From positions 10,230,001-10,294,000 of the forward strand of contig NC_090366.1 in the NCBI RefSeq assembly GCF_035084215.1: 64,000 bases of DNA. Direction: 5' to 3'. Shown in pieces: positions 9,026 through 55,829 of this stretch. How positions within the stretch are numbered: position 1 is the first letter of the stretch; every line of letters starts with the position of its first letter. Position numbers and translations under genes: made by a program. The notes below the pieces were generated by a model, which saw only the letters and a list, made by a program, of their open reading frames with translations, made no database searches and was not told the origin of the DNA. This DNA is from Heptranchias perlo. Lineage: Eukaryota.

Positions 9026-9074
9026 ATGAAGTGCTTCGGATTTTCCTTCCTCGTTGTCCTGCCGTTTACAGAAG
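9026..9074 (+). CDS. Siglec-like copy 1, signal-peptide exon (MKCFGFSFLVVLPFTE)
   Basis: ATG, hydrophobic leader, phase-1 donor gaag|gtaaat matching the leader-exon end of copies 2 and 3. Confidence 0.75.
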
Positions 9075-9772
9075 GTAAATCGTTTACTTTGTCTTTACAG
9101 AAGCCACCAGAGTTGGCGCAATGAGACTCTTTGCAATGGAGGTAAACTTGCATCAACAGTCAGGTTACAAGTGCTGGGTTGGTGGTTTCACCAATTGTTC
9201 GCTGGATCTGGGATTTGCATGGATGGAAACATGCTCTCCGACACCTATCCCCAAACAATACCTGGTCATTATCTCATTGCTGTTTGTGGGATCTTGCTGT
9301 GCGCAAATTGGCTGCTGCGTTTTCCTTTACTGCAATAGGGACTACACATCAATAGTGCTTCATTGTCTTTAAAGCGCTTTGGAACATCCTGAGGTCGTGA
9401 AAGGCCCCAGATTGTTCCTTCTTGCAAAAGGTTGGTGTTTTAAAGTAATTTGATTTCAAAGATGGAGTTGGTCCAATGCGCCATACAGACCAGGAAGGTC
9501 CAACCTTTCATCTCCGCCAAGTGTCGAGTTAGCCAATCACAGTCAGGGCTGATACGATTGGCCTCAATAATCCTTAGTTGAGAGGCGGGGAAGAAGAACT
9601 GGTCAGAGTTCTGCTTCTGAACTCCTGAATCCAGTGACTCCTCCTGGCAATGACGGCATTGGGTTAGACTTTTACTCCCTGCTTCCCTCCAGCAGTTGAA
9701 TAGCCCACCAACATTTAATGTCCAGTCTCACACACAAAGAATGGCCATTTAAGCAACGTACCAGAAGACCAC

Positions 9773-11450
9773 AGGGGGAAAATTGGATCGGGCCTGTTTT
9801 GGGGCGGGGGTAGCACGATCCGCTATTACCCCGCGCCCAATGGTCACTGCGCGGGCAGGATGAGATTTTCGTCAAGTCTGAGGACTTACCTGCAATCTGC
9901 GTTGGAAATCAGCGTGAATGAGGATTCCATGCAATTCGCACTTTCCACCAGCAGGGGAGCTCCAGTCTCTTAAAGGCAGGCTGTCTGTTAGAAATCTCTT
10001 AAAGGGAGCTGCTACCTGTTGCTTGCTGAATATAACAGCCTGCTGTCTGCAGGGAGTCTGAATAGAGATCAAACACTGCACACGTAAAGCACAGATGCAG
10101 GTCCCATCCCTATGTTTACATACTGATGAGTTATGTTAAAACATTGAATAAAGGTTGCACACCACTAAATCCCACATCCTCCAATCTGCATGCCAGACCT
10201 CGCCAAACTGCTGATCTGAGAGTCCGTGCACCAAGGTTCTCTGCTGATGCACCAGAGGTCTTGATGCAAGAGGTGGACAGAAGGAGGGACATCCTATACC
10301 CACGGAGGGGGTGGGGAGCAAGAGGCCCTCCAGACATATGCCCAAAAGGCAGTGGGAGGCAGTAGGGGATGAAGTCAATGCCAGGGGCACAGCATCATGA
10401 ACATGGATGCAGTGCAGGAAGAAGTTCAATGCTTTGACATGAGTGGTCAAGTTGAGTGAGGTCAACTGTCAAGTGGCATCTCCTACCAATTGCACCACTA
10501 GCTGCATCCACTGCTCCACACACTACACCCAACACCCACCTACCAACAAACTCATTCCATCAGTACTCAACTCTTCCAATCAGATGCATCCTCTGACCCT
10601 CACACATTACCACTATTGCAAACCACCGACCCACAACTCACAGGCCACACACACTGGCAGCTATTCAACCATGACAGGCACATCACTCAGGCACACGCCC
10701 CGCTTTCTTGCAGGAGAAGGTGGCGCATATCAGTAGGCAGCAAGTGGCAGTGGCATTCAGCCCCTCGAGCCTGTTCTGCCATTCAATGAGATCATGGTGG
10801 ACCTGTGACCTAATTCCATATACCCGCCTTAGCCCCATATCCCTTAATACCCTTGGTTCACAGAAATCTATCAATCTCAGATTTAGAATTCAGAATTGAG
10901 TTACCATCAGCTGCCGTTTGCAGAAGAGCTTTGCAAACTTCTCACACCCTTTGCGTGTAGAAGCATTTCCTAACTTCACTCCTGTACGTCCTGGCTCTAA
11001 ATGTTAGGTTATGTCCGTAGTCCAAGTATTCAAGTATAGGAGACCTCCAAAAACAGTTACAAATGTCTCGGCAGCCAGAAGCAACAATCCAGCCACTAAC
11101 CTGTAAATCCTGCATGGTCCCTTTAAATAGCGCTGGTGGGGGGGGTCCTCCAGGCACTCTAAGACACGCTCAGATGGTCGGGGTTAAGACTGTACATTGA
11201 GTTGAGCGTTAAGTCCCAAAATGGTGTCTATCACTTTAAATCAGCGTTTCACACTGATTGAAGCCATTTTCTCCCTACTTTACATGATTCTAGCGTTCGT
11301 TATCTGCGCCTGCGCCAACTCCTATACCAAGATGGCGTCTGGTGCATGTCACGCTGGAAACATGCGTGCGCATCCAAGATGCCATCTTGGATGTCATAGA
11401 GGCCGTGTTGCGCTGAAATAACGGGCGCTACATTGTCCAATTTAGCACCC
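9773..11450 (+). mobile_element. Harbinger-like DNA transposon derivative with degenerate Myb/SANT-like coding remnant; contains a CR1 tail near 10750-11030
   Basis: Termini ggggaaaattgga ... tccaatttagcacccc; RAPRFSADAPEVLMQEVDRRRDILYP (ORF 10126..10365) followed out of frame by WMQCRKKFN. Confidence 0.7.
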
Positions 11451-11451
11451 C

Positions 11452-12775: not shown

Positions 12776-13156
12776 TTCTTTGCGGCATTCCATGGTCCGT
12801 GGTGATGCCGCAATTTCTGTCGACTGTGACCGGCTCGTGTGCAATGATTCCTTGTACGGTCAAACATCCAGTTTACGACAGAAGCCCAATAGCGATGTGG
12901 TTAATGGAGGATCCTCATCTAAGTATCTCTGAGTTCTCTATTCTCTACAATTCGGGAGATCCAGTTGGGAGCCACTCTAACTACAGTGGGAGAGTTGAAT
13001 TTATGGGCAACCTCAGTAATAAACAATGTTCCTTACTGATAAAGGATATCAGAAAGAGTGACGAGGGTGTACATTACTTCAGGGTAAACGTGTCGTTTCC
13101 TTGGTTTAATGATACATCTCAGATCTCCGAGTCTAAGATTTCTCTTTCTGTTTTAG
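12776..13156 (+). CDS. Siglec-like copy 1, V-set Ig exon (open, 381 nt)
   Basis: ttctcag| acceptor, |gtaagt donor; WSVVMP...GSCAMIPC...KQCSLLIKDI...DEGVHYFR with the Siglec Cys pattern and Arg codon at 13081-13083. Confidence 0.88.
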
Positions 13157-17000: not shown

Positions 17001-17403
17001 TGGTATCTAGGACATACCCGGTCTGTATCGCACTGGGAAGTGTTGTAACCAATAGGGTAGATTAGTTCTTCCTTATTTGTAAAGAGTTAATGTTGATTGT
17101 AAATGCTGCGTGTCTGACTGTTTGGCAGGATTGTAGGTCGAAGGTTCATTATGAGATGAATTCATATGATAAAATGAATGCTGGTTAACGAAATGATGCC
17201 AATATTAATTGGCGAGGCAGTTACTTATTTTATACAAGGGATAATTCACAATAGGTAACTTAATTTCAATACAGAGCACACAGACAGTATAATAGAATTA
17301 GATTATGCTTCTAATTCTTTCTCAGACTTTAGATCGAATCGCCACTCGACAAATTTAAGATTGAGATGTCCGGTCACACATGCGTTTCCTTCTCGTCTTA
17401 CAG

Positions 17404-17701
17404 ATAATCCAGATATCTCAGATTCAGGGGAAATGACTGATGGACAACCAGTCAGATTGACCTGTTCTATTACCTACAGTTGCCTAAATTGCAAACTCCA
17501 ACTGAAGTGGATTGATTACAATGGTTCTTTTCCATTTTGGTGGAATCGCTAAGATAGAAAAGAGACTGTGAATGAACTTCTGAGTTCGTGGGCAGTTTCA
17601 TCCACGTTTACCTGCACATCACGGGAAAACGGTGGGATGCAAATTTATAATCGATGGTGTGAGAACTAATGACCCACAATCTCTTACGCTGGAGGTTTTA
17701 T
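17404..17701 (+). pseudogene. Siglec-like copy 1, disrupted C2-set exon
   Basis: cttacag|DNPDISDSGEMTDGQPVRLTCSITYSC...LKW; in-frame TAA at 17550-17552; 298 nt versus 312 nt in copy 2 (14-nt deletion, frameshift); HGKTVGCK...LTLEVL|gtaagt in the shifted frame. Confidence 0.88.
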
Positions 17702-18099
17702 GTAAGTAACTGCTCTAAACTTCATGGAACCAACTTATCGCAAACGACTTCAATGCTTCAAGGGGTAGAAAATCGTGTTGAGCGGTAGATTGGAACTCTA
17801 TATCGGGTGGAGCTTATGACAGTGTCACCGTCCATTTTGTACTGTGCATTCACCACATGCAACTGCAATTGATACTAGCTCAATTGCTAAATTTAAATCT
17901 GAGATAGATAGCTTTTTGGCAACCAAAGGTATTAAGGGATATGGGCCAAAGGCAGGTATATGGAGTTAGATCACAGATCAGCCATGGTCTTATCAAATGG
18001 CGGAGCAGGCACGAGGGGCTGAATGGCCTACTCCTGTTCCTCTGTCTACCTGCTGTAGAAGCTTTAATGTGGAATGGGTTTAGGGCAGTGTGAATCCCG

Positions 18100-26106: not shown

Positions 26107-26264
26107 TCAGTTATACTTAATATCAACATATTGACTCATCTCTATGCCCTGAAGGAACAGTTAAAAAAATGCACAGTGGCGTAATTAATTTCAGGGTTCT
26201 GCTCAGTCGAATCTGTTATCAGTACCCCGACGTTATTGTCTGGCTCATTCTCACAATGATCTCC
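26107..26264 (-). pseudogene. Orphan terminal cytoplasmic exon A of a convergent ITIM receptor (frameshifted)
   Basis: ttgcag|GDHCENEPDNNVGVLITDSTEQNPEINYATVHF; ITIM INYATV; net 16-nt loss puts SQYVDIKYN* out of frame (new stop at 26142); minus-strand AATAAA at 25752-25757. Confidence 0.72.
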
Positions 26265-36800: not shown

Positions 36801-39800
36801 TGTTTTCCTTGAGATGTTCTGAGAAGACTCTTAATTTGGGTAATGTGGAAAATGGAGTCTGAATACCTGAATACCTGGGATAATTGAAGATTAGAGACTG
36901 AATTCAAATAAGGCTCGCAAGCGAATGAACCATGTTTGTGAGATGAATATTGGCACACATTCGGGATTGGAGACTGAATTCTTTGTTGTGCTTTATTCAG
37001 TCCTCAATAACATCCTTTCAAGGTTGATGTCATCCTGGTAATTTAAATACAGCACCGTGTGAGGGGGGTTCGTTTGTTGCTTCCTGACCCCATGTTGCAT
37101 TTTACCAAATGTCTCAGTTACGTTAAAAAATTCCGACTGTTTTATCGAGGCAGAGGTGTATTCGATGGACTGTCCGTGTACGTTTCTCTTTCCATGATTT
37201 GATATGTACGGAACAGATAGGAATTCAATGTATAAATATTTATTTTAAATTTACACAGGGCATAGAACAAGGGTAAAATGATGGGGGAAATCCAGTGTTA
37301 GTTCGTGGAAAAAGCAATCAGTTCAAATCCTACCCTGTCCATTTTCTGCGAATATTTCCCAATATATTAATGCAGCATATTGATGTTTTTTAGAGAGATT
37401 AGATTAGGGATCATTTTCAAATCGTGCGTCCTTTGATCGCCGGGTCAGAGTTCTGAGGTTTCAGTAAATATATAAAATCTTTGGGTCTGACTTTTAAGAT
37501 GTGAATCTCTAGGAAACTCGCCAATTCAGGCGGATTAACGTTATCCTAATACCATGTTGTAATCGTAGAGCAATAATGAACAACAAAGTTGAGGGGCATA
37601 GATAAGATAGATAGTCAAAATCTTTTCCCAAAGGTAGGGGAGTCTATAACGAGGGGGCATAGATTTAAGGTGAGAGGGGAGAGATAAAAAAGGGTCCAGA
37701 GGGGCAATTTTTTCACTCAAAGGGTGGTGAGTGTCTGGAACGAGCTGCCAGAGGCAGTAGTAGAGGCGGGTACATGGGGAAGATGGGTATAGAGGGATAT
37801 GGGCCAAGTGCAGGCAACTGGGACTAGCTTAGTGGTATAAACTGGGCGACATGGAGATGTTGGGCCGAAGGGCCTGTTTCCATGTTGTAACTTCTATGAT
37901 TCTATGATTCTATAAAGTATTTTTGAATATTTCAGGAACTTTTCCCTGGATAATTGTCATCGCAGCTGAAGCAGCGGCCACTTTGATCATCCTGTTTCTG
38001 ATCGCGGTGATGTTACTGAGGTATGTGTGGTGCACAGTTTACATGAACTCTTGTGTTAATCACAGATCTGAAAGGGGTCCATGGCATCAGGATTTCTGCC
38101 TCTGAGAAACTATTACAGTGAACTGTGTGGAGGATAATAACAGATATCAGGAGGACATGGACAGACACATGACAGATGAAATTGAACGCAGAGAAGTGAT
38201 TCATTTTGGTAGGAAGAATGAGGAGAGGCAATATGAAGTAAATGGTACAATTTTGAAGGGAGTGCTGGAACAGAGAGCCTCGAGGGTGCATGTACACAAA
38301 TCTTTGAAGGTGGCAGGAAAAGTCGAAAAGGTCGTTCAAAAGCATTTGGGATCCTGTGTTTTATAAATAGAGGCATAGAGTGCAAAAGCAAGGAAGTAAT
38401 GCTGAACCTTTATAAATCACTGGTTGGGCCCCAGCTGGAGTATTGGGTCCAATTCTGGGTACCACACTTTAGAAAGGATGTAAAGGTTTTAGAGAGGGTG
38501 CAGAGATTATTTACTAGAATGGTACCAGGGATGAGAGACTTCAGTTACGTGGACAGACTGGAGAAGATGGATTGGTACTCATAGAGCAGAGAAGTTTAAG
38601 AGGAGATTTGATAGACGTGTTCAAAATCATGAACGGTTTTGATAGAGTAAATAAGGAGAAACTGTTTCCAGTGGCAGAAAGGCCGGTAACCAGAGGACAC
38701 AGATTTCAGGTGATTCGCAAAGAACCAGAGGCGACATGAGCAAACATTTTTTTTAAGCAGCGAGTTGTTATGATCTGGAATGCACTTCATGAAAGAGCGG
38801 TAGAAGCAGATTCAATAATAACTTTCAAAAAGGACTTGGATAAATCACTTGACGGACAAACAAATCATTACTATGGGAAAGAGCAGGAGAGTAGGACTAA
38901 TTGGATAGCTCTTTCAAATAACCGGAACAGACGCGTAGGGCCGAATGGCCTCCTTCTGTGCTGTACCATACTATTTTACTATGATGCTATTTCTTCAAAT
39001 ACTTAACCCTTGAAAGCTTTGGCCCTGAAACTCAGCTCAGAGTTGTCTATCGCTTCTCCCAGCTCGAATAACAGACCGGAATAATTCTACTCTAGACTTT
39101 GGCTCAGTCTCCTTCGCTTCTAAGTTTAAAGTTTGTGGTTCCAGCCTCCAAATAAAACATGAGCCCCGCATCGAGCCGGACACACCACTGTAGTGTAGTG
39201 CGGCATTGTGGGAGGTGCCGTCTTTCACATCAGACATTAAACCTAAGCATCGTCTGCATGCTCAAGCGGATGTGAAATATCCCTTGATAATATTGGCGGA
39301 AGAGAAGGGAGTTTCCCCCGTGTCATGGCAAAAATATATCCAGCCAGTCAAGCCAGGAAAACAGATTAACTGTTCACTTGACTCGCGTGGGATCTTCCGA
39401 TTGCTCTTTAGGCAATATGTTAGGCCTATGTTTGCAAATCCGGCCTCATTAATCACACCTCTGCTACTTAATAAGATGTTAATTTGTGAAACAAAGTGTT
39501 AATAAACAATAAAATTACCCCGCTATTTCATATAGTGGGAACACACTTGATAAAAATCCTCTAATTGTTTTTGAAACAAAGTGTTATCTTAGTGTGAGGA
39601 ACTCCTATGACCGTTATTTGAACAGTTGTTCGCAATCTATCTACAAGTGTGATAAAATACTGTGCAGGCTGATCTTTTCTCCAAGTGCAGACTGCACCAA
39701 TTCATTATCCAGCTTCATGGGATAGAGAGAAATCGTCATTCAGAAATATGTAACCGTAAGGATAGAACAGAAACTGGAAGGAAATCATGTCTATGCTAAT

Positions 39801-42800
39801 CAGGAAACGTTATATACACAAATCCTTGATGACGTAGGGCACCAGAAGATTTATTAACCTTAAATATAAGCAGTTATGAGATTTTCATTATTTGTATTGT
39901 TTTGAATCAGGAAGAAGACAAGAGACACCGTTAGTGTCCCCGCAACAAACAACGATTCTGTGACTTACGCTGCGGTGCAGCACCCGTTTAACACTGAGGT
40001 AAGTGAGGAGATGGAAATTGTCCAGCATTCGCTGGAGTTACCTGCCTGATATTTGCTCTGTTTGTAACCAGTGGAAATGACATTCAACACAAAACGCAAC
40101 GGTTTAACGGGTGCTTTAGATACTTGTTTTGACGGAATTTTTACAGGGTGGAAGGGCCACCTCAGCCTACTGACAGGAACTGATGCGCTGGTCATGACCT
40201 GATAAATCGGTCATGGACATTTACAGTATTGGGGATTTTATTGAATTCAAAGTAGGTCGAAGAAAATCGTTTTCTCATATCACTTAAGGAAACAAATCTT
40301 GCACTGCCCTCCCTCATGACATTATGACACTCGGGGGATGGGGTTGGTTCGTGAATCTTTGGAATTCTCTCCCCCAGAGGGCTGTGAATACTCAGTGGTT
40401 GATTATATTCAAGGCTGAGATGGGTAGATTTTTGGACTCTAAGGGAATCATGGGATATGGGGATTGCGGAGGAAAGTTGAGTTCAGGTCGTTGTTCAGCC
40501 ATGAACTTATTGAATGGCAGAACAGGCTCGAGGGGCCCTATGGCCTCCACCTACTGCTATTTCATATGTGCGTTGCTTTAAATTCTCAGCAAGATCACAG
40601 TTTGTGACGGGCCTGAGAAGCGCCAGACCGCATTGCAGTTCTCTTGGATTATCTGCATTTTCCTCCCTGGATTTTACGTCCCAATTTATTCTGGGGTGGG
40701 ATCGGTCCGTGCGAGGGGCCTGGGTGTGCAACATGCTCGCCTGCCGAAAGCCGGATTGATTTTACGCCCGGTCCAAGCCCCGGCATAAATAATTGCCTGG
40801 CCGGCCGGCGCGCCCATATTTTTGTGAAGGAGAAGGCCGCTGCTTGCGACCGCGGGAATAGCCCCCAAAAGTCAGGTAAGGGTTGGAAATGGGGGCGAAG
40901 TTGATCTGGGTAGGGGGAGAGGAGTCCGCGACAAGGCAGCCATAAGGTTGCCTTGTGGCGCCAGAAGCAGTACTCCTGCCGCTCCTGGCTCACAAGGAAA
41001 TCGATATAAGAAATAAAAACTCACTGGGGCTGTTCTGGCCACCATTCAGCTCCCGACACGTCTCCCTCGCTAAGGCTTCGGGCTAAAATGACGCATTGGG
41101 CTCCAATGCCATATATGGAGTCCGATCCGCATATTTATAGAGGGCCCCGCCGTCTTGCGGTGGATGTCCTTGCCCCCTGCAATTTAAAATTGCAGGCGGT
41201 CATATCTGAGCGGGAAAGGGTTAGATAAGTAGCCCGCTCCATTTTAAGTGTCCTACCTCGTATCCGCCAGGCGCACGGAGTTAGATTCAGGGCATTAATA
41301 TTGGTTTGGATGAGTTGGTCGCGCCCACGGTCTGTTTCACAGTGTTGGTGGTTCAAAGCCTACGTCACCCAACGTGGATGCAGGAAGGATGTTTTCCCTT
41401 TCTGGGGGGTCCAGAACGGGGGGGGGGGGGGGGGTCACAGTCTCAGGATACGGGGTAGGACATTTAGGACTGAGATGAGGAGAAATTTCTTCACTCAGAG
41501 GGTGGTGAACCTGTGGAATTCTCTACCACAGAAGGCTGTGGAAGCCAAGTCACTGAATATATTTAAGAAGGGGCTACATAGATTTCTAGACACAAAAGGC
41601 ATCAAGCGGGATGGGGAGAGAGCGGGAATATGGTATTGAGATAAAGGATCAGCCATGATCATATTGAATGGCGGAGCAAGTTCGAAGGACAGAATGGCCT
41701 ACTCCTGCTCCTGTCTTCTAGAATCATAGAAGTTACAACATGGAAACAGGCCCTTCGGCCCAACATGTCCATGTCGCCCAGTTTATACCACTAAGCTAGT
41801 CCCAATTGCCTGCACTTGGCCCATATCCCTCTATACCCATCTTACCCATGTAACTGTCTAAAAGACAAAATTGTACCCGCCTCTACTACTGCCTCTGGCA
41901 GCTTGTTCCAGACACTCACCATCCTTTGAGTGAAAAAATTGCCCCTCTGGACCCTTTTGTATCTCTCCCCTCTCACCTTAAATCTATGCCCCCTCGTTAT
42001 AGACTCCCCTACCTTTGGGAAAAGATTTTGACTATCGACCTTATCTATGCCCCTCATTATTTTATAGACTTCTATAAGATCACCCCTTAACCTCCTACTC
42101 TCCAGGGAAAAAAGTCCCAGTCTGTCTAACCTCTCCCTGTAAGTCAAACCATCAAGTCCCGGTAGCATCCTAGTAAATCTTTTCTGCACTCTTTCTAGTT
42201 TAATAATATCCTTTCTATAATAGGGTGACCAGAACTGTACACAGTACTCCAAGTGTGGCCTCACCAATGCCCTGTACAACTTCAACAAGACATCCCAACT
42301 CCTGCATTCAATGTTCTGACCAATGAAACCAAGCATGCCGAATGCCTTCTTCACCACCCTATCCACCTGTGACTCCACTTTCAAGGAGCTATGAATCTGT
42401 ACTCCTAGATCTCTTTGTTCTATAACTCTCCCCAACGCCCTACCATTAACGGAGTAGGTCCTGGCCCGATTCGATCTACCAAAATGCATCACCTCACATT
42501 TATCTAAATTAAACTCCATCTGCCATTCATCGGCCCACTGGCCCAATTGATCAAGATCCCGTTGCAATCCTAGATAACCTTCTTCACTGTCCACAATGCC
42601 ACCAATCTTGGTGTCATCTGCAAACTTACTAACCATGCCTCCGATATTCTCATCCAAATCATTAATATAAATAACAAATAACAGCGGACCCAGCACCGAT
42701 CCCTGAGGCACACCGCTGGACACAGGCATCCAGTTTGAAAAACAACCCTCTACAACCACCCTCTGTCTTCTATCGTCAAGCCAATTTTGTATCCAATTGG

Positions 42801-43846
42801 CTACCTCACCTTGGATCCCATGAGATTTAACCTTATGTAACAACCTACCATGCGGTACCTTGTCAAATGCTTTGCTGAAGTCCATGTAGACCACGTCTAC
42901 TGCACAGCCCTCATCTATCTTCTTGGTTACCCCTTCAAAAAACTCAATCAAATTCGTGAGACATGATTTTCCTCTCACAAAACCATGCTGACTGTTCCTA
43001 ATTAGTCCCTGCCTCTCCAAATGCCTGTAGATCCTGTCCCTCAGAATACCCTCTAACAATTTACCCACTACAGATGTCAGGCTCACTGGTCTGTAGTTCC
43101 CAGGCTTTTCCCTGCCGCCCTTCTTAAACAAAGGCACAACATTTGCTACCCTCCAATCTTCAGGCACCTCACCTGTAGCGGTGGATGATTCAAATATCTC
43201 TGCTATGTTTCTATGTCACATTTTGAGCCTTCCATCCAGAGTTTGACTCGGATGTAGCACAGAGCAAGTGCTGCATTAAGGGAGGTGCCGTCTTTCAGAT
43301 GACTGCTTAATCCAGGGCCTTGGCTGCCTGTTCCAGTAATCCAGTTGGATGTTAGAAATCTCAATGCAATATTGGAAGAAGAGTCGGGATTTCTCCAAAT
43401 GTAATGGTTAAAATTGGTCGAAACGTCACCAAAATTGATCGCCAGGTCATTCTACTCATTTGCTTTTATTGTGGGCGAATTAGCTGATGTAATTTAAATG
43501 TAATCCATTGGTTACAACATGCTGTAATGAGGTGCTATGTAAACACACGTTACTTATTGTTTTAGAGCTTAAAATGCTTTACTCACTGAGTAGGGACATT
43601 AGACCATACCAGGTAGGGAATAACGCGAGTTATTCTGGTACAGGAAGCGCACTCCCACCTAGCAGCAGTTCCATATCTAATTCCTACTTTCTGTTCCAGA
43701 GCCAAGGCCAGTATGCAAACACTGATGTTCGAGGGGCTGCCTCCAAACAATCAGCAGAAAGAGAAAATGTGCTGTACGCAGCTGTCAAAGTATCAAACGT
43801 TCGCAAACATGAGAAATATCTCCAGAATGAGGAGTCCAGTGAATAG
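30782..43846 (+). CDS. Siglec-like (MAG/CD22/CD33-related) inhibitory receptor, copy 2; 8 exons, 533 aa: join(30782..30824,31205..31585,32270..32581,33548..33805,35204..35491,37936..38020,39911..39998,43700..43846)
   Basis: Exon phases are all compatible (1,1,1,1,1,2,0), total 1602 nt with no internal stop; signal-V-C2-C2-C2-TM-ITIM-ITIM; orthology not assignable from sequence alone. Confidence 0.88.
31205..31585 (+). CDS. Copy 2 exon 2, Siglec V-set domain
   Basis: WSVNMP...GSCAEIPCTFDYP...KQCSLRIKDI...DEGEYYFR...EQYT; Arg codon 31510-31512; donor is GC (ag|gcaagt). Confidence 0.92.
32270..32581 (+). CDS. Copy 2 exon 3, C2-set domain 2 (absent from ORF track)
   Basis: cttacag|EKPSISVSGELIAGQPAQLTCSITHSCPSANLELKW...FTFVPSSDHHGKTLGCKL...LTLAVK|gtaaat; extra Cys (HSCP) for the Siglec interdomain disulfide. 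Confidence 0.92.
32929..34832. repeat. Three pairs of inverted repeats surrounding exon 4
   Basis: 32929-33232 vs 34525-34832; 33231-33420 vs 33982-34170; 33436-33556 vs 34395-34502; ORF 32998..33243(+) matches 34497..34763(-). Confidence 0.9.
33548..33805 (+). CDS. Copy 2 exon 4, C2/I-set domain 3
   Basis: FAPRKPTV...EGSSVLLYCTAQG...LRW...DDGQYWCVAEN...ISVQ|gtaagt; a second in-frame AG lies 6 nt upstream (start 33542). Confidence 0.92.
35204..35491 (+). CDS. Copy 2 exon 5, membrane-proximal Ig domain resembling MAG domain 5
   Basis: tttttag|YKPSIVSGPNCTISESGIDCTCSVRANPPANITW...SSLTL...ISCVAANKHG...|gtaagt; C-x8-CxC pattern. Confidence 0.9.
35725..36535 (-). mobile_element. Second-family LINE 3' fragment in intron 5
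   Basis: ORF 35772..36542 LQQDLDNIQAWADKWQVTF...MEYSPLAW. Confidence 0.9.
37590..37913 (+). mobile_element. Young CR1 3' fragment inserted just upstream of the TM-exon acceptor
   Basis: Target duplication aaagt at 37585-37589 and 37914-37918; near-identical to the 3' end of the CR1 at 41720-43203. Confidence 0.88.
37936..38020 (+). CDS. Copy 2 exon 6, transmembrane segment
   Basis: tttcag|GTFPWIIVIAAEAAATLIILFLIAVMLL(R)|gtatgt. Confidence 0.88.
38118..38980 (+). mobile_element. Degenerate CR1 3' portion in intron 6
   Basis: ORFs 38118..38366, 38399..38584 (LYKSLVGPQLEYWVQFW), 38770..39006. Confidence 0.88.
39911..39998 (+). CDS. Copy 2 exon 7, cytoplasmic, ITIM VTYAAV
   Basis: aatcag|(R)KKTRDTVSVPATNNDSVTYAAVQHPFNTE|gtaagt; phase 2 in, phase 0 out. 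Confidence 0.88.
41720..43203 (-). mobile_element. Young 5'-truncated CR1 LINE with open 441-aa RT ORF, nested in the tail of another CR1 fragment (41385-41720)
   Basis: ORF 41842..43167 with uninterrupted RT motifs ([32 protein letters not shown]). Confidence 0.95.
43700..43846 (+). CDS. Copy 2 exon 8, terminal cytoplasmic exon (QYAN, ITIM VLYAAV)
   Basis: ttccag|SQGQYANTD...ENVLYAAVKV...EESSE* then AAIKLK* in frame to 43867. Confidence 0.88.
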   Translation, partial: SQGQYANTDVRGAASKQSAERENVLYAAVKVSNVRKHEKYLQNEESSE

Positions 43847-46735: not shown

Positions 46736-48264
46736 AAATATTCGTTATAATTATTTCTGCTGGAGACGTTTTCCATCTTGTGGAAAAATAACAAAGTAAT
46801 TAGTTACAGACATGGTATATTGTTAGTTTGTGATTTGTGAATTCATGAAGTGGCTATTTCAGGTATGTTACATTCGAAACTTTAATCTGTATTTTATTCG
46901 GATTTATTGAACACAATGTGTGTTTTATTCGGTATCAATGAGAATTTTAATGGAATTTAAGAAGTTTCAGTGGGGTTTCCACGTGTTTTAATGGTTGGTG
47001 ATGTATTGATTAATGGGTGATTAAAGAGTAATTTAAAAGCATTTAGCTGGATTGTACGGGAATGTTTGAATTGGAACGTTTTTGGGTATTTCAATGGGTG
47101 TTTGATTTCTATTTATCATCAGTTGTCCATAGTTCACCATGGTCTGTGGCGATGCCATGCTTTGTGACGGCAGTGAGCGGTTCAGGTGCAGAGATCCCGT
47201 GTAAATGTGATTATCCCGTCGATGGCCGCAACCCACGGGGTATGTGTTTAAAGCGGGGTTCTGATCCTGGAACCCGAGGAGTCTTTATTGTCTCTGATCC
47301 CAGAGGCCCAGTCAATATACACTTGATCTACAGAGGGCGAGCTGAGTTCACCAGCGACTTCACATAAAAACAATATTTTTTACGGATAAAATACATTGAT
47401 GAAGGTGACTATTAATTCCGACTGAAGAAAACCAATGCCCGGAATATTATAAAAGAACATGCTTCCAGGTCACATGTCAATCTTTCTATTTTAGGTATTT
47501 TTGTTTTCGTTTGTTCCTTTTTTCGTTTATATTCCATCTTCTCAGTACCATTTAACTTAATCCTCGAATGGAAAGATATCGTGATACTCCTAGCCTACGT
47601 CACAAGCTACAGGGAGGCTGCAGGTACATTGAATAATACCGAGGTGCGTGTTACGTTTTGACTTGAACAGAAATAATTGAATTCTCAGCAACTTGCAGAA
47701 GCTCCCTCCATTTTTAATGCCACATCCAGTCGTGAATGGTGGTGGACAATTAAACAACTAACGGGAGGAGGAGGCTCTGCAAACATCCCCATCCTCAGTG
47801 ATGGTGGAGTCCAGCACGTGAGTGCAAAAGACAAGGCTGAAGCGTTTGCATCCATCTTCAGCCAGAAGTGCCGAGTGGATGATCCATCTCGGCCTCCTCC
47901 CGATATCCCCACCATCACGGAAGCCAGTCTTCAGCCAATTCGATTCACTCCACGTGATATCAAGAAACGGATGAGTGCACTGGATACAGCAAAGGCTATG
48001 GGCCCCGACAACAACCCAGCTGTAGTGCTGAAGACTTGTGCTCCAGAACTAGCTGCGCCTCTAGCCAAGCTGTTCCAGTACAGCTACAACACTGGCATCC
48101 ACCCAGCAATGTGGAAAATTGCCCAGGGATGTCCTGTCCACAAAAAGCAGGACAAATCCAATCCGGCCAATTACCGCCCCATCAGTCTACTCTCAATCAT
48201 CAGCAAAGTGATGGAAGGTGTCGTTGACAGTGCTATCAAGCGGCACTTACTCACCAATAACCTG

Positions 48265-48930
48265 AGGCGAGACCATGCAGACGCTGCGACAACGGATGAA
48301 CGGACACCGCACAACAATCGCCAAACAGGAGGGTTCCCTCCCAGTCGGGGAACACTTTAGCAGTCATGGACATTCATCCACCGACCTTCGGGTAAGCGTA
48401 CTCCAAGGCGGCCTTCGAGACACACGACAACGCAAAATCGTCGAGCAGAAATTGATAGCCAAGTTCCGCACCCATGAGGACGGCCTCAACCGGGATCTTG
48501 GGTTCATGTCATGCTACACGTTACCCCACCAGCGAACAAATGTTATCTGTTTTTAATATAATGGGTCATTTGCTGGCTCTCTCTGCCTTCCGGATGTTTC
48601 TGCCTCTCTCTGTTTTTTTTCTCTGTTTTTTTTCCCTGTTTGTTTTTTTGTTGAATGTGTATTCGGGGGTTCTGCAGGTGACACCTCTCTGTCTGAACAC
48701 GGTGATTGCCTTGGCAACGGGCAGTTGCAGGGGCAGTCTGTAAACACCATGTATTGTTCTATATGTATAAATGCGTAGGCTTCAAGGAGCTCCTGAAACA
48801 TTTACCTGAGGAAGGAGGAAGTCTCCGAAAGCTTGTGAATTTAAAATAAAATTGCTGGACTATAACTTGGTGTTGTAAAATTGTTTACAATTGTCAAACC
48901 CCAGTCCATCACCGGCATCTCCACATCATG
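48265..48930 (+). mobile_element. Penelope-like element 3' fragment (GIY-YIG endonuclease C-terminus plus pLTR)
   Basis: ETMQTLRQRMNGHR...VGEHF...EQKLIAKFRT...GLNRD (ORF 48275..48556); 12-bp target duplication accaataacctg at 48253-48264 and 48931-48942. Confidence 0.88.
48800..48840 (+). ncRNA. Minimal type I hammerhead ribozyme-like motif in Penelope pLTR
   Basis: atttac-CTGAGGA-a-ggag(gaagt)ctcc-GAAA-gc-TT-gtgaat: core boxes, stem II, palindromic AAGCTT, 6-bp stem I. Confidence 0.7.
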
Positions 48931-51900
48931 ACCAATAACCTGCTCACCGATGCTCGGTTCGGGTTCCACCAGGACCACTAGGCTCCAGACCTCATTACAG
49001 CCTTGGTCCAAACATGGGTGAGGTGAGGTGAGAGTGACTGCCCTTGACATCAAGGCAGCATTTGACCGAGTGTGGCACCAAGGAGCCCTAGTAAAATTGA
49101 AGTCAATGCGAATCAGGGGGAAAACTCGCCAGTGGCTGGAGTCATACCTAGCACAAAGGAAGATGGTAGTGGTTGTTGGAGGCCAATCATCTCAGCCCCA
49201 GGGCATCGCTGCAGGAGTTCCTCAGGGCAGTGTCCTTGGCCCAACCATCTTCAGCTGCTTCATCAATGACCTTCCCTCCATCATAAGGTCAGAAATGGTG
49301 ATGTTCGCTGATGATTGCACAGTGTTCAGTTCCATTCACAACCCCTCAAATAATGAAGCAGTCCGAGCCCGCATGCAGCAAGACCTGGACAACATCCACG
49401 CTTGGGCTCATAAGTGGCAAGTAACATTCGCGACAGATAAGTGCCAGGCAATGACCATCTACAACAAGAGAGAGTCTAACCACCTCCCCTTGACATTCAA
49501 CGGCATTACCATCGCCGAATCCCCCACCATCAACATCCTGGGGGTCACCATTGACCGGAAACTTAACTGGACCAGCCATATAAAGACTGTGGCTTCGAGA
49601 GCAGGTCAGAGGCTGGGTATTCTGCGGCGAGTGACTCACCTCCTGACTCCCCAAAGCCTTTCCACCATCTACAAGGCACAAGTCAGGAGTGTGATGGAAT
49701 ACTCTCCACTTGTCTGGATGAGTGCAGCTCCAACAACACTCAAGAAGCTCGACACCATCCAGGACAAAGCAGCCCGCTTGATTGGCACCCCATCCAGCAC
49801 CCTAAACATTCACTCCCTTCACCACCGGCGCACTGTGGCTGCAGTGTGTACCATCCACAGGATGCACTGCAGCAACTCGCCAAGGCTTCTTCGACAGCAC
49901 CTCCCAAACCCGCGACCTCTACCACCTAAAAGGACAAGAGCAGCAGGTACATGGGAACAACACCACCTGCAGGTTCCCCTCCAAGTCACACACCATCCCG
50001 ACTTGGAAATATATCGCCGTTCCTTCATCGTCGCTGGGTCAAAATCCTGGAACTCCCTCCCTAACAGCACTGTGGGAGAACCGTCACCACACGGACTGCA
50101 GCGGTTCAAGAAGGCGGCTCACCACCACCTTCTCAAGGGCAATTAGGGATGGGCAATAAATGCCGGCCTCGCCAGCGACGCCCACATCCCGTGAACGAAT
50201 AAAATAATAAGTGTAATGCTGGACTGTAATGTTTTCAGATTCCCATACATGCTGATAAACGCTATCCTCATACCGTGTTGTAATCTTAGAAGAATAATGA
50301 GCAGCAAGCTTTTTCTTTTGAATATTTTAGGTACATTTTCATTGATAATATCCATGCGAATAAGAGCAGCCGCCGCAGTTATCATTCTGATTGCAGTCGT
50401 TGTCTTGGTGAAGTTTGAGAGGAATCTGCAAAAGTTCGAAAAGCAACTGGATGTGTTCCCTCCAGGCATTCAAACCACAGGTGGGATGTTGGTTAATGTA
50501 CCTCATCGGCATTGTTATCTCCTGGAACTCCTTTTAGTGATCAGAGAGGAATTTAACATATTTTTTTGATGAAGTGGCCTCATGCTTTTTATCTATTTTT
50601 TGCCTCTTCCTGGTGGTGGGAGGGAAGGCGCGTGTCCTGATGCTTTGATGGGTCATGACAGTTTGGGTCATGCTCGATGGACCAGTCGGTCTTTTCCTTC
50701 CCGTCTTTTCGTACGTGTGTAAGTTGTAAAGCTCAAAATGTTCCCCTAACTCAGTAGGAACAATAGATTAGTGCCAGAGGTGGAATTAAGCGGATTATTC
50801 CGGTACTGAAAGCGCACTCTCACCCGGAACAATGACTCCATGTCTAAGGCAGTACGTTATGTTATAGAGCCCAGGCCTTTATATAATCATTGGCCTCTAT
50901 GGTGTGAAGAGGAGTTGTATGCAGTGGGCAACGTTTGAAACTTTCGCAAACTTGAAAGATATCCCCAGACTGAGGAATCCAGTGAATACCCCGCAATTAA
51001 ATTTAAGTGAAAATCGAATGGGATTTACTGCATTTGGACGGATAGATCTGATCAATAACTCAACACATCTGGTTTCATGAGATAGAACAGGGACTTCACA
51101 CTCAGGAAGGGCTGTGAAAATGGACATCTTCCCGAGATTAATTGCGAACATTTTCAATTCTCTTTGTTGGAACATATGATTTATAACCCCACACAGTTTT
51201 CATTTTAACCAACAATCTGAAATGCAGTGAGGTAGACTTTAATGGTCAATATAACTTTTCAATAACTTTATTTTTACTTTAATAAACATAATTAATTTCC
51301 TAAGTAATTTTAACGTTGTTTCCATTTAAGGCTTCCCTCTCTCACCTTGTTATATGGTCCTGTTGCACGGCGTTTAACGTCTCCAAAGGCGGCTCTGTTA
51401 GTTTGGAAGCCTCTCCCATCCAGTGTAACAAATGTTCAGCTCAGTGTCAATTTTCATCAGTTTCATTCACGACGATATCCAGACATTTATAAACATATAG
51501 CTTCATTCAGAAGCAGTTTGCAATGGAAGCGAACTGATTACAAAGGGCGGAGCAGGGAGTTCCATGAATTATTGAAGTATGTATTGGATTCCACTCTTTA
51601 TCAAACTGTACTGAAAATTAATACTTGCTTAAAGATGGTGGGGCCATGGTTAGAAAATGATCATGACGTAACTGATCATTTGTTATTGTTTTGTTATCCA
51701 ATGAACGTGGATTACTTTACTTTACTTAAAGTCAAAATAAGCATCCACCCTTGCACAGACAGGTACAGTAGTCAACAGAAGAAATACGCTCTTGTTAGTT
51801 TGTACAGCAACTGGGTTAGACCCTCCCTTTTAACTCTCTGTGTTAGTGACAGTGTAAATATGGCTGGGGGATTCCATTTGGTCCCTTTGCGGTAGTGACA

Positions 51901-52660: not shown

Positions 52661-55655
52661 AAAATCTTGCATTAATATACTGCTTTAAATTGTAAAAACC
52701 AAAGCCGCTTGCTGAGAAGCGGAATATCAATACAGTACAGGATGTTTAAGAATATTAGAGAGAGCTAATTGAAGGCTATAACCAAATGATGGCTTTGGAG
52801 GAAGAGAGTGAAGTCGAGAGTAGACGATGATAGAAAGGGGGCGCCAGACTACATGGCCTAGGCGGCTGCAAGTGCTAGTTCACAATAGTGGGATGTTGCA
52901 ATGTGAACGCCACAATCACAGCACTAATAGTGCATGAAAGTAAATTCGCAAAAAGTTGCAGCGAATGGAAGGCGAACTGTTATGATCTGGAATGCACTTC
53001 CTGAAATGTTGATGGAAAGCGATTCAACAGTAACTTTCCAAACGTAATTGGATATATAGGTGAAAAGGAAAAAATAAACAGATGTTTGGGGAAAGAACAG
53101 GGGAAGTGGGACTAATTGGATAATCCTTTCAAAGAGCCGGCACATGAATGATGGACCGAATGTTCTCCTGTGCTATATGATTCTACGAATGGTAAGTAGA
53201 GGAATGTCGGAGACGGAGGTAACGACGGTATCCTGAAATTCGGACAACAAACCAGCACTAATTGATTTGACGTCACAGTCTCGATTATAATGTCCCAATT
53301 AAATATTAAAGCACGTTAATTTCCATAAAATAACTATGTTCCAAGCATCAAAGAAAATAACTTGCATGCAACGTAGCAAAGAATCACATTTGTGAAATTC
53401 CCTCATTTACTTTAATTCAACCTAATACACCTTAAACTGTGTTGCTAATAAGACCAAACATTGCATGAGGAACGTCACAAGCTTTAAAACGTGTTTGGCG
53501 TAAGATTTACCTTGGATAACTGAAGATTCCCGTGCTTGGTATCCAAATGGCAGTTTGAGCTATTGTTTCCATCAACAGGATGGAAGGAAAGTAACCAGAT
53601 CACAGTGCACGCCTTCTATTGGACAAAGGTAGCAAGTGCATTTCATCAGGTCGAACACATTCTCCGGCCACATCTGTTATGTTTAGCACACTGTGTACAC
53701 ATTTCGACAGTCTATGTTGGGAACAGTGAGGTAAATCAGGAGTTGAAGTTGCATGTTATGTCTCTCTACCTACTTTCGGACTCAGATGTGCCTGATGATA
53801 CAGTGACAGACATCCAGCCTATATAATGCTGTCGGTCTGCCACTGTGTGGCGCGCTGTTGAGTTTGAGCAAACCTTTTTCTCCACACTGATAATACGGAG
53901 CAAACAAGACCTCAGGTGGCAGAATGAATCAGAGAAATTATAACAAACTGCAATTCAAAATCCGATTGTAGGTTTTCCAACTGCCACGGTAAACAGAAAA
54001 CAATTGAGCCATTAATCTGTCCCAAGCCCAGCGAACCTGGGCTCAGAACTTAAAGGTCAGTCAGGGCGCCCGCTCCTGTCGAAAAACCCGCACATACTTG
54101 TTTTTCGGTTTGCAAGTTAAAAATGGTCAACTGTGTGAGGCACCCGTGGAAACACATTTTAATAAGAAGAAAGAACTTCAGAACATGGGCATCATTGGAA
54201 AATTGGAGGGAAAAGTCGTGGAAAAATACAAGGACATTTCTTATTCATTCTCGGGATGTGGGTGTCGTTGGTAAGGCCAGCATTTATTGCCCATCCCTAG
54301 TTGCCCTTGAGAAGATGGTGGTGGTGAGCTTTCATCTTGAACCGCTGCATATCGTGTGGTGAAGGTGTCCCCACAGTGCTGTTCGGTAGGGAGTAGCTGG
54401 ATTTTGACCAAACGACCATGAAGGAACAGCGAGATATGTCCAAGTCAGGATGGTGTGTGTCTTGGAGGCGAGTTTGGAGTTGATGGTGTTCTGAGACACC
54501 TACTGGCCTCACTGTCGGCAATAATAGCTTCCTCCCAGCTTACTTTTTGATTGTAGGGGTAATTGTACAGTTCCACACTACAAGCTCAGAACCACGCTTG
54601 AAATGATTTGGGTGGGGGTGTGGAGGGCGGGGAGGGTTTGAGGTGTTGACAAAGAATTGGGAACAGTAATGCGGCCTATCTCCGACCCATGTTTCCTGTA
54701 ATTCACACAAGCACATTGTCCTTTGAAGGGAAATAATTTGACCTTCAAAATTTCCCAATAAATGTTCACTGATTATCCTTATATTGAAAATGCTTTAACA
54801 ATCCGTTTGTCGGTTCTGTTTAATCGTCTATTAATATTTGATATATGTCGTTTCAAACTGATGATAGTGACTAAAATAACAGGCAACATTTACTGGAGAG
54901 GCATTAGAATATATTTTATGTTCACCGGGCGCAGCGTTGCTCTGCACCACACCCACTGTTCAAACGTCCCGCTGGTGTGCTGATTTTTTAACATGGCAAG
55001 TCACATGGGGAGGCTGTGACGTTTCTGTCAGATTGCCCTTACATTTTATATATCGTTTGGAAACCCGGAAATGGAACATCCCGAGGACTAGAGTGCACGG
55101 CTTCCCACTCATTCCCATTCTTTCCGCCCCGCACGCTTCCTCCTTAGGTAATAAATAAGCTTTAGGTTCCACTGCGAACGTTTGACCTTAATTATGTTTG
55201 TCCTGTTGTAAATCTACGATATCTTATAGGAAAAAGCACTGATACATATATAGTTCCCAACACGATGTTGACGTTATAACGTCACAAAAGTCATCCATAG
55301 TTTATTATCGCTGTTGAGTGAACCCAGTTGCAAATGTCCCTGTGGACATCCAGAGAGGGCAGGATCAGATTCGGGTGATGGGTCTCGCTGCAAACTTCAT
55401 TGTTAATAGAGCCATCTGCAAAATAGCAGCTTGAGCGAGGGATTGGAGGAACCGGAGCTCAGCAAGGAGTCAATTCGTTCAAGGTGGAAGAGGAGAATAT
55501 TGGGGCAAATACTGCAAGCAACAACGGCGAGCGTTTCCATTGTCTTGATTGAACAAACGGCTGGTATCTGCTGGTTTTTATATTTAGTTCGTTTGGAGAA
55601 AGAAACTGAAATGTGGACAATCAGACAATACGACCTCTGCAGGTTCTTGTCCTTT

Positions 55656-55829
55656 TCAGTTGTACTTAATATCTGCAAATTGACTTATCCCTTTGCCATG
55701 TATATATCCTTGCCCTTGAGGAATATGTGAAAAATGCACAGTGGAGTAATTAATGTGTTCGTTCTGCTGAGAGGAATCTGACATCAGTTCCCTGACGCCA
55801 CTGTCTGGATCATTCTCACAATGTTCTCC
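55656..55829 (-). CDS. Terminal cytoplasmic exon B of a convergent ITIM receptor (frame open; gene may be a pseudogene)
   Basis: ttgcag|GEHCENDPDSGVRELMSDSSQQNEHINYSTVHFSHIPQGQGYIHGKGISQFADIKYN*; ITIM INYSTV; minus-strand AATAAA at 55301-55306; no ectodomain exons recognised in the window. Confidence 0.68.
   Translation of the reverse strand, partial: GEHCENDPDSGVRELMSDSSQQNEHINYSTVHFSHIPQGQGYIHGKGISQFADIKYN

What the first reader, a model, noticed from the sequence alone, without database searches (positions are those of the whole stretch)
9026..55829. Shark-type cluster of Siglec-like receptors with a MAG-like ectodomain and an immune inhibitory tail, in birth-and-death turnover
Seen: three + strand paralogues (one intact, 533 aa; one truncated; one pseudogene) and two convergent ITIM terminal exons. 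Known: the GxC-xx-IPC / CSL Cys pattern, the F-strand YYFR Arg, the D2 xCP Cys and a C-x8-CxC last domain are Siglec/MAG hallmarks, and QYT after the Arg recalls MAG NQYT. Unlike 5-domain MAG, this has 4 Ig domains and a tail with two ITIMs plus a YxN site. Inference: a lineage-specific expanded inhibitory Siglec family analogous to CD33-related Siglecs. I cannot tell whether it is already annotated.
Basis: partly seen in the sequence, partly recalled or inferred. Interest (0 to 1): 0.85.

Follow-up and report, generated by a model that had tools for sequence, protein, structure and literature searches.

The report
Shark Siglec-like inhibitory receptor gene cluster
This stretch of sevengill-shark DNA holds one intact and several decayed copies of a Siglec-type immune receptor gene; the family is widespread in sharks and rays and is already in automatic gene annotation, but I found no paper describing it.

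Summary
The window is Heptranchias perlo DNA. It carries three + strand Siglec-family paralogues.

- **Copy 2 (30782-43846):** eight open exons encoding signal peptide, V-set, three C2-type Ig domains, a transmembrane segment and a two-ITIM tail. Exon arithmetic gives 535 or 533 aa.
- **Copy 1:** intact signal peptide and V exon, but a broken second Ig exon.
- **Copy 3:** a pseudogene with in-frame stops and a LINE insertion.
- **Minus strand:** two exons that are homologous terminal exons of the same family.

The V domain matches sialoadhesin and other Siglecs by sequence and by fold, and it keeps the sialic-acid arginine. The last Ig domain matches MAG domain 5. Spliced contigs from public runs use the predicted exon borders, though most come from paralogues.

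In a V-domain tree both intact V domains sit inside a well-supported clade made only of sharks and rays, in two old subfamilies. They are therefore not a one-to-one MAG or CD22 orthologue. Which conserved Siglec lineage is their sister stays open.

The genes are already RefSeq models. The copy 2 model (XP_067831291.1) skips most of the V domain. The scan has noted several other Siglec-like clusters elsewhere in this genome. Sialic-acid binding and inhibitory signalling are inferred, not shown.

The parts
9026..9074 (+). Copy 1 signal-peptide exon (16 codons plus 1 base; GT donor)
   Evidence: 100% match to residues 1-16 of RefSeq XP_067831554.1 (P0016). Sequence read.
12776..13156 (+). Copy 1 V-set exon, 381 nt and open. 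Arg kept (HYFR). Donor AG|GTAAGT.
   Evidence: Pfam Ig_CD22 40.6 bits. 98% match to P0016.
17385..17732 (+). Copy 1 second Ig (D2) pseudo-exon with an in-frame stop and a frameshift
   Evidence: 66% DNA identity to copy 2 D2. Three-frame reading.
26142..26264 (-). Minus-strand ITIM terminal exon (INYATV). No upstream Ig exon found between it and copy 2, so it is probably a relic.
   Evidence: Paralogue of 55656-55829. Weak tail homology: 15 of 1000 shuffles reach its score. No minus-strand Ig hits.
30782..30824 (+). Copy 2 signal-peptide exon
   Evidence: Sequence. Spliced contigs join about 30824 to 31205, GT..AG, in runs X1 and X2.
31205..31585 (+). Copy 2 V-set exon: GSC..IPC, QCSL, YYFR. 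Ends in a GC donor (TTAG|GCAAGT).
   Evidence: Contigs run through the internal donor at 31321 as far as 31515-31525.
32270..32581 (+). Copy 2 D2 (C2-set) exon with the extra HSCP cysteine
   Evidence: 100% match to P0135. Aligns with Siglec-5 and MAG domain 2. The contig joint at 32581 uses GT..AG.
33542..33805 (+). Copy 2 D3 (I-set) exon
   Evidence: Pfam I-set 48 bits. Joint 33805 to 35204, GT..AG, in X1 and X2. The P0135 junction reads KLPVAP.
35204..35491 (+). Copy 2 D4 exon with C-x8-CxC
   Evidence: 100% match to P0135. Aligns with MAG residues 396-479, domain 5.
37936..38020 (+). Copy 2 transmembrane exon, with a Glu inside the hydrophobic span
   Evidence: Matches P0135.
39911..39998 (+). 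Copy 2 first cytoplasmic exon, carrying ITIM VTYAAV
   Evidence: Conserved in Mustelus, Scyliorhinus, Heterodontus and Carcharodon relatives.
43700..43846 (+). Copy 2 last coding exon: YAN site, ITIM VLYAAV, TAG stop at 43844-43846
   Evidence: The stop lies where copy 3 and 13 of 20 relatives have the Tyr of a distal EYAAIK-type motif.
47116..47494 (+). Copy 3 V pseudo-exon (start approximate): two in-frame stops, two cysteines lost, 3-aa deletion
   Evidence: 75% DNA identity to the copy 2 V region including intron. No Pfam hit for the open part.
47677..50146 (+). LINE reverse-transcriptase ORFs occupying the place of copy 3's D2-D4 exons
   Evidence: ORFs. No D2, D3 or D4 hits in copy 3.
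50329..50412 (+). Copy 3 transmembrane exon relic (approximate), with Arg where copy 2 has Glu
   Evidence: ORF and frame 2. The position comparison was done by eye.
50867..51010 (+). Copy 3 last-exon relic with a deletion and an in-frame stop. Keeps SEYPAI, where copy 2 stops.
   Evidence: tblastn hit 50906-51007. 68% DNA identity to 43559-44315.
55656..55829 (-). Minus-strand terminal exon of a family member (INYSTV; distal motif with Phe in place of Tyr). Any upstream exons would lie beyond 56 kb or off the window.
   Evidence: Full-length alignment with the P0164 tail: 0 of 1000 shuffles reach its score. No Ig exons found at 56-64 kb.

Best explanation
The window is a piece of a Siglec-family receptor gene cluster on a 15.7-Mb scaffold of the sharpnose sevengill shark.

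**Copy 2.** It encodes a type I membrane protein: a signal peptide, a Siglec-type V-set domain with the F-strand arginine, three C2-type Ig domains of which the last is like MAG domain 5, a transmembrane helix, and a cytoplasmic tail with two ITIMs.

**Most likely working (inferred).**
- The V domain binds sialylated glycans through the arginine.
- Src-family kinases phosphorylate the ITIM tyrosines.
- SHP-1/SHP-2-type phosphatases are recruited and damp activation of the leukocyte that carries the receptor.

**The other pieces.** Copies 1 and 3 and at least one of the two minus-strand terminal exons are decayed products of duplication.

**The family.** It is specific to sharks and rays and is old. 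V1 and V2 belong to two subfamilies shared by several shark orders. The family often loses the arginine.

**Shown versus inferred.** Gene structure, family membership, decay of the paralogues and splicing of family transcripts are shown. Ligand, signalling and cell type are inferred.
For: **Species and gene.** RefSeq XP_067831291.1 (P0135, Heptranchias perlo) matches the D2, D4 and cytoplasmic exons at 100% identity.

**Siglec V domain.**
- Pfam Ig_CD22 and V-set both score above their cut-offs.
- Sialoadhesin scores 2.2e-14, with YNFRFEIS aligned to YYFRLKIS.
- The AlphaFold model has pLDDT 91.7. The best Foldseek matches are the sialoadhesin V domain (TM 0.81-0.83) and MAG Ig1 (TM 0.85).
- The three-cysteine pattern and the Arg are present.
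- The extra D2 cysteine aligns with that of Siglec-5.

**MAG-like stalk.**

**Tail.** Both ITIMs are conserved in relatives from several other shark genera.

**Splicing.** Contigs of runs X1 and X2 join about 30824 to 31205, 33805 to 35204 and 32581 to 35204, all GT..AG.

**Family.**
- The V search found 827 proteins at E <= 1e-3.
- The elasmobranch-only clade has support 98/93. V2 is sister to a Heptranchias paralogue (95/93). V1 sits in a 9-row subclade (99/94).

**Decay.**
Against: - No binding, signalling or tissue data exist.
- Most of the spliced contigs are 87-97% identical to the window, so they come from paralogues. The closest differ at 4 of 229 and 11 of 313 aligned letters. The runs are only guessed to be RNA.
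- Copy 2's V exon ends in a GC donor, not GT. RefSeq's model instead splices from an internal donor and drops the Arg-bearing part of V.
- Copy 2's stop removes the distal tyrosine motif that 13 of 20 relatives keep.
- 13 of the 23 elasmobranch-family V sequences that I aligned lack the arginine, so sialic-acid binding is not a family constant.
- The transmembrane Glu is unusual for a purely inhibitory receptor.
Confidence: 0.75

Rival explanations
1. Copy 2 is simply the shark one-to-one orthologue of myelin-associated glycoprotein (Siglec-4), a glial adhesion molecule rather than an immune receptor.
For: MAG is the best solved-structure match of the gene's RefSeq protein, at 168 bits. D4 aligns with MAG D5, including C-x8-CxC. 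NCBI names the protein MAG-like. No authenticated shark MAG turned up in my searches.
Against: - It has four Ig exons, not five.
- There are six Heptranchias V rows in one elasmobranch-only clade, and three paralogues in this window alone.
- It has a two-ITIM tail.
- Another Heptranchias protein, P0141, scores higher against MAG at 238 bits.
- The V domain scores higher against sialoadhesin than against MAG.
Confidence: 0.05
2. The 'intact' copy 2 is itself on the way to being lost, or makes mainly a V-less product. All exons are open, but splicing out of the V exon is impaired and the tail is shortened, so the window holds no fully working receptor.
For: - It has a GC donor where copies 1 and 3 have GT.
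- RefSeq's model uses the internal donor at 31321 and has no signal peptide.
- A TAG sits on the distal motif's tyrosine codon.
- No contig identical to copy 2 spans V to D2.
Against: - AG|GCAAGT is the usual form of working GC donors (general knowledge, not tested here).
- All eight exons are open with matching phases.
- Contigs 96.5-98.3% identical join the signal-peptide exon to the V exon and run past 31321 unspliced.
- Both ITIMs are intact.
Confidence: 0.2
3. The family is Siglec-derived but does not work as a sialic-acid sensor. Its V domain recognises proteins or other ligands, as paired receptors such as PILR partly do.
For: 13 of 23 elasmobranch-family V sequences have lost the arginine. 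PILR V domains are among the sequence and fold matches.
Against: Both open V exons in this window keep the Arg, the A-strand Trp and the Siglec cysteine pattern. Arg loss in some members is also known among mammalian CD33-related Siglecs (recalled).
Confidence: 0.15

Closest known systems
Myelin-associated glycoprotein (MAG, Siglec-4)
   Same: It is the best solved-structure match of the C2-type domains (168 bits). The last domain aligns with MAG D5, including C-x8-CxC. V domain fold TM is 0.85. The F-strand Arg is shared.
   Different: This gene has 4 Ig domains, not 5. It is multi-copy with decayed paralogues and has a two-ITIM tail. Its V domain is closer in sequence to sialoadhesin. Orthology is not resolved, because no authenticated MAG sequence was available for the tree.
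Mammalian CD33-related Siglecs
   Same: Shared features are a clustered, expanding and decaying gene family, a V domain plus C2 domains, and a membrane-proximal ITIM plus a distal tyrosine motif in the family consensus. Members also lose the Arg repeatedly. A sister relation is not rejected (AU p = 0.217).
   Different: In the V tree the window's domains lie in an elasmobranch-only clade (98/93). They are apart from the clade of Marmota Siglec-12 and the amphibian Siglec-12/13-named proteins (100/98). The stalk domains are MAG-like. Synteny was not tested.
Sialoadhesin (Siglec-1) V-set domain
   Same: It is the top sequence match (2.2e-14, 56.7 bits) and the top fold match of the V domain. The A-strand Trp and F-strand Arg align.
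   Different: Sialoadhesin has 17 Ig domains and no ITIM (recalled). Elgaria sialoadhesin sits in a separate clade in the V tree.
RefSeq gene models XP_067831291.1 ('myelin-associated glycoprotein-like', 423 aa) and XP_067831554.1 ('sialoadhesin-like', 144 aa) of Heptranchias perlo
   Same: They are the same genes as copy 2 and copy 1, with 98-100% identity to the exons.
   Different: The copy 2 model has no signal peptide and skips 88 codons of the V exon, including the Arg. The copy 1 model is signal peptide plus V, read on into the intron.
Teleost expanded Siglec-like families named MAG-like or Siglec-13/14-like by NCBI (e.g. cyprinid si:dkey-238d18.5 relatives)
   Same: They are likewise multi-copy Siglec-type V plus C2 receptors outside the four 'conserved' fish Siglecs.
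   Different: They fall in separate clades in the V tree.

Membership tests
Siglec family (I-type lectins) | N-terminal V-set Ig domain of Siglec type | tested here: met
   Pfam Ig_CD22 scores 40 bits (cut-off 27) and V-set 40.3 bits (cut-off 26). Siglecs are the 18 best solved-structure sequences. The fold matches sialoadhesin and MAG Ig1.
Siglec family (I-type lectins) | Conserved arginine on the F strand that binds the sialic-acid carboxylate | tested here: met
   YYFR aligns with sialoadhesin YNFR. The Arg is present in V2 and V1, and even in the V3 relic. Its role in binding is not testable here.
Siglec family (I-type lectins) | Siglec cysteine pattern: three Cys in V (no F-strand Cys) and an extra Cys in the first C2 domain | tested here: met
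   C21, C26 and C84 are present and the F strand has FR. The HSCP Cys aligns with the extra Cys of Siglec-5 D2. The disulfide pairing itself is recalled, not tested.
Siglec family (I-type lectins) | Binding of sialylated glycans | not testable with these tools
   Needs a recombinant V-Fc protein and a glycan array.
Inhibitory immunoreceptors (ITIM-bearing) | Cytoplasmic [S/I/V/L]xYxx[I/V/L] motifs after a transmembrane segment | tested here: met
   VTYAAV and VLYAAV are present and are conserved in relatives. Phosphatase recruitment is not testable here.
CD33-related Siglecs | Membership of the CD33-related clade by V-domain phylogeny | tested here: inconclusive
   The ML tree puts the window's V domains in an elasmobranch-only clade, apart from the tetrapod CD33-related-like clade. 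Holding the two clades together costs only 4.5 lnL (AU p = 0.217).
CD33-related Siglecs | Location in the conserved CD33-related gene cluster (synteny) | not tested
The window holds no flanking non-Siglec genes, only LINE debris.
MAG (Siglec-4) orthologue | Five Ig domains | tested here: not met
   Copy 2 has four Ig exons.
MAG (Siglec-4) orthologue | Single conserved orthologue per genome | tested here: not met
   There are three paralogues in the window, and further Heptranchias paralogues in the same clade.
MAG (Siglec-4) orthologue | Membrane-proximal domain of MAG D5 type | tested here: met
   D4 aligns with MAG 396-479, including C-x8-CxC (E 1.8e-8).
CD22 (Siglec-2) orthologue | V domain inside the CD22 clade; seven Ig domains | tested here: inconclusive
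   There are four Ig exons, so the domain count is not met. The V domains lie outside the CD22-named clade (98/95). A sister relation of the whole elasmobranch clade to that clade is not rejected (AU p = 0.33).

The most novel reading that the evidence does not exclude
The elasmobranch clade is the true sister, or co-orthologue, of the tetrapod CD33-related Siglecs and/or of MAG. Under this reading, inhibitory Siglecs with a MAG-like stalk and a tail of ITIM plus a distal EY..IK-type motif were already a multigene, arginine-losing, birth-and-death family in the ancestor of jawed vertebrates. MAG and the mammalian CD33-related cluster would then be its specialised survivors. That contradicts the printed view that fish lack such receptors.
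Probability: 0.2. Interest if true: 0.7.

Novelty: new member of a known kind. Interest (0 to 1): 0.45.

Why it matters
Reviews and a fish-focused study hold that fish have only Siglec-1, CD22, MAG and Siglec-15 and lack inhibitory CD33-related Siglecs. I saw this in passages of PMC7226832, a teleost study that does not mention sharks.

This locus and its many relatives show that sharks and rays carry a large, old, turning-over family of ITIM-bearing Siglec-type receptors. That gives a second, independent or ancestral, instance of the dynamics seen in the mammalian CD33-related cluster. It would allow comparative tests of why such receptors repeatedly lose their sialic-acid arginine.

In practice, the copy 2 RefSeq model needs correcting, since it lacks the lectin part of the V domain. 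The NCBI names (MAG-like, sialoadhesin-like, Siglec-5/13) should not be read as orthology.

Tried and rejected
**Orthology and references.**
- One-to-one MAG or CD22 orthology is rejected on domain number, copy number and the tree.
- I tried to obtain authenticated references, but several 'MAG'-named proteins are not canonical MAG. P0074 belongs to an expanded cyprinid family. P0382 and P0405 score only 119-127 bits against mouse MAG. P0141 belongs to another elasmobranch expansion. The tree therefore lacks a true mammalian MAG, CD22 or Siglec-15.
- AU tests against the CD33-related-like, CD22-named and sialoadhesin clades rejected nothing (p = 0.217, 0.33, 0.139).
- Full-length phmmer score rankings against multi-domain references were set aside, because repeated Ig domains inflate them.

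**Searches that found nothing.**
- Minus-strand Ig exons upstream of the two minus-strand terminal exons: none.
- Rfam at gathering threshold: no match in the window.
- A findings search for a MAG orthologue: nothing.

**Literature.**
- Searches by listing for Siglec with cartilaginous fish, shark plus ITIM, Callorhinchus, or elasmobranch, and for MAG plus shark plus Siglec-4 gave no paper on shark Siglec clusters.
- I read one passage of PMC8455134, which lists Siglecs among gene families of jawed vertebrates.
- I read four passages of PMC7226832.
- PMC13358205 gave only a reference-list hit.
- Subscription papers, such as the 2018 Siglec evolution review that I recall, and all supplements were not seen and may bear on novelty.

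**YxN site.** Rejected as a family feature: 0 of 20 other tails have it.

Full report
**What is there.** The window is shark DNA full of LINE debris, with no N runs. Three + strand sets of Ig exons stand out.

Copy 2 has eight exons with matching intron phases:

| Exon | Coordinates |
|---|---|
| Signal peptide | 30782-30824 |
| V | 31205-31585 |
| D2 | 32270-32581 |
| D3 | 33542-33805 |
| D4 | 35204-35491 |
| Transmembrane | 37936-38020 |
| First cytoplasmic | 39911-39998 |
| Last coding (stop 43844-43846) | 43700-43843 |

The exon lengths sum to 1605 nt, or 535 codons.

**Identity of the locus.**
- A full HMMER scan with the V exon found 827 proteins at E <= 1e-3 and 8 at E <= 1e-30.
- One hit, P0135, is RefSeq XP_067831291.1, 'myelin-associated glycoprotein-like' of Heptranchias perlo.
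- P0135 matches the D2, D4 and cytoplasmic exons at 100% and D3 at 95% over a local alignment that overruns the exon. It contains only 29 residues of the V exon.
- The model starts at an internal Met, uses an internal donor at 31321 (G|GTATGT), and so lacks the signal peptide and 88 codons of V, including the arginine.
- The cause is probably that copy 2's V exon ends in a GC donor (TTAG|GCAAGT). Copies 1 and 3 have GT at the same place.
- Copy 1 is RefSeq XP_067831554.1, 'sialoadhesin-like', 144 aa.

**Family membership.**
- *Pfam.* V2 scores 40.3 bits for V-set and 40 for Ig_CD22. V1 scores 40.6 for Ig_CD22. D2 and D4 hit C2-set_2, and D3 hits I-set at 48 bits.
- *Solved structures by sequence.* The V exon's best matches are sialoadhesin (2.2e-14), Siglec-10, -8 and -5, MAG (1.6e-9), Siglec-7, CD33 and Siglec-15, then PILR. 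The sialoadhesin alignment puts YNFR on YYFR.
- *Fold.* An AlphaFold model built on a 33-row alignment has pLDDT 91.7 and pTM 0.85. Its best Foldseek matches are the sialoadhesin V domain and MAG Ig1 (TM 0.81-0.85).
- *D2.* It aligns with Siglec-5 and MAG domain 2, with the extra cysteine in register.
- *D4.* It aligns with MAG residues 396-479 (domain 5), including C-x8-CxC.
- *Whole RefSeq protein.* It scores 168 bits against MAG, 45 against CD22 and 38 against Siglec-8.

So 'Siglec with a MAG-like stalk' is a fair description.

**The tail.** It has VTYAAV and VLYAAV. Both are conserved in relatives from Mustelus, Heterodontus, Scyliorhinus, Carcharodon, Pristiophorus and other Heptranchias genes.
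- Thirteen of the 20 other tails examined end in a third motif of the type EYAAIK.
- In copy 2 a TAG stands on that tyrosine's codon, where the copy 3 relic still has TAC.
- The YAN site is unique to copy 2: 0 of 20 others have one.

**Paralogues and decay.**
- Copy 1 keeps an open signal-peptide exon and V exon. Its D2 has a stop and a frameshift, and nothing follows it.
- Copy 3's V exon has two in-frame stops, two lost cysteines and a deletion. LINE ORFs fill 47677-50146. Transmembrane and last-exon relics remain, the latter with a stop.
- The minus-strand exons 26142-26264 and 55656-55829 have good acceptors and lie in a 1.6-kb direct duplication (78% identity).
- The second aligns along its whole length with the last-exon tail of a family member (0 of 1000 shuffles reach the score). 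The first is weaker (15 of 1000).
- No minus-strand Ig exons were found upstream of either within the window. The first is probably an orphan relic. The second may belong to a gene beyond the window's end.

**Transcription.** One search found three coded runs of one sample. They are guessed, not recorded, to be RNA.
- Laid on 30200-35700, their contigs cover the exons and not the introns.
- They carry GT..AG joints at about 30824/31205, at 33805/35204 and at 32581/35204, the last skipping D3.
- Most contigs differ from the window by 3-13% and must come from paralogues. The closest differ at 4 of 229 and 11 of 313 letters.
- Those two join the signal-peptide exon to the V exon and continue past the RefSeq donor at 31321.
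- No joint 31321/32270 was listed, but contigs cannot show absence.

This shows that the family is spliced at these borders. It does not prove that copy 2 itself is expressed.

**Phylogeny.** I built a careful IQ-TREE of 57 N-terminal V domains over 127 columns. I chose the rows from the 420 proteins held; many teleost and elasmobranch rows were left out.
- Both window V domains sit in an elasmobranch-only clade of 19 rows (support 98/93).
- V2 is sister to a Heptranchias paralogue named Siglec-5 (95/93).
- V1 lies in a 9-row subclade (99/94) with three other Heptranchias proteins plus Heterodontus, Scyliorhinus, Pristiophorus and Mobula.
- The V1/V2 split therefore predates the shark orders sampled.
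- CD22-named proteins, Elgaria sialoadhesin, and a clade of Marmota Siglec-12 with amphibian Siglec-12/13 form separate, supported clades.
- The backbone is weak (75/39). AU tests do not reject joining the elasmobranch clade to the CD33-related-like clade (p = 0.217), the CD22 clade (p = 0.33) or sialoadhesin (p = 0.139).
- Reference names are NCBI's automatic ones. Several 'MAG' names proved unreliable, so no authenticated MAG was in the tree.

**Arginine.** Of the 23 elasmobranch-family rows in alignment A1, 10 keep the Arg; these include V2, V1 and its duplicate P0016. The other 13 have K, A, I, S, T or L. All 10 outgroup rows keep it.

**Extent.** In my searches eight distinct Siglec-named RefSeq proteins lie on the same 15,743,313-bp record. 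The scan's own unchecked notes list further Siglec-like clusters 6.6-6.7 Mb before and 3.3-3.6 Mb after this window. They also list Siglec-15-like genes on other pieces.

**Novelty.**
- The genes are already automatic RefSeq models, so the locus is not unknown.
- Five literature searches found no paper on Siglec expansions in cartilaginous fishes.
- A teleost study states that fish genomes lack inhibitory CD33-related Siglecs (passages of PMC7226832).
- Supplements and subscription reviews were not seen.

I rate this a real, well-formed member of a known kind. It is of moderate interest because it belongs to an undescribed, large elasmobranch radiation.

Noticed in passing
window 31321 and 31585-31590: Copy 2's V exon ends in a GC donor (TTAG|GCAAGT), while copies 1 and 3 have GT. 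RefSeq's model uses an internal G|GTATGT donor at 31321 and loses the lectin half of the V domain.
   Followed up: partly
window 43844-43846 versus 50990-51010: Copy 2's TAG stop sits on the codon that is TAC (Tyr) in the copy 3 relic. In 13 of 20 relatives this is the Tyr of a C-terminal EYAAIK-type motif, so copy 2 has lost a third tyrosine motif by a nonsense change.
   Followed up: yes
window 25767-26066 and its copy near 55.3-55.6 kb: About 300 bp just downstream of the minus-strand stop codon is 96-98% identical between the two duplicates. The flanks, coding part included, are 72-86% identical. This could be a gene-conversion patch or a constrained 3' UTR element.
   Followed up: partly
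window 26270-27385: A 24-bp minisatellite of about 46 copies abuts the acceptor of the minus-strand exon 26142-26264. Only a short version is present beside the second copy (55835-55987).
   Followed up: partly
window 32929-34832: The D3 exon is bracketed by inverted copies of its own upstream intron (32929-33553 against 34832-34387, 88-91% identical), plus small copies of its 3' end. Paralogue transcripts skip D3 (joint 32581/35204).
   Followed up: partly
window 37936-38020 and about 50329-50412: Copy 2's transmembrane segment holds a Glu, and the copy 3 relic holds an Arg at the same place (compared by eye). This hints at former pairing with charged adaptor chains.
   Followed up: no
alignment A1 (shark relatives): The sialic-acid arginine is replaced in 13 of 23 elasmobranch-family V domains. 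This includes most of V1's subfamily, although V1 itself keeps it.
   Followed up: partly
window 41842-43167 (-), 47677-50146 (+), 56039-58833: Long LINE reverse-transcriptase ORFs lie inside copy 2's last intron, in copy 3 and downstream of the cluster. The 441-aa ORF at 41842-43167 is uninterrupted.
   Followed up: no
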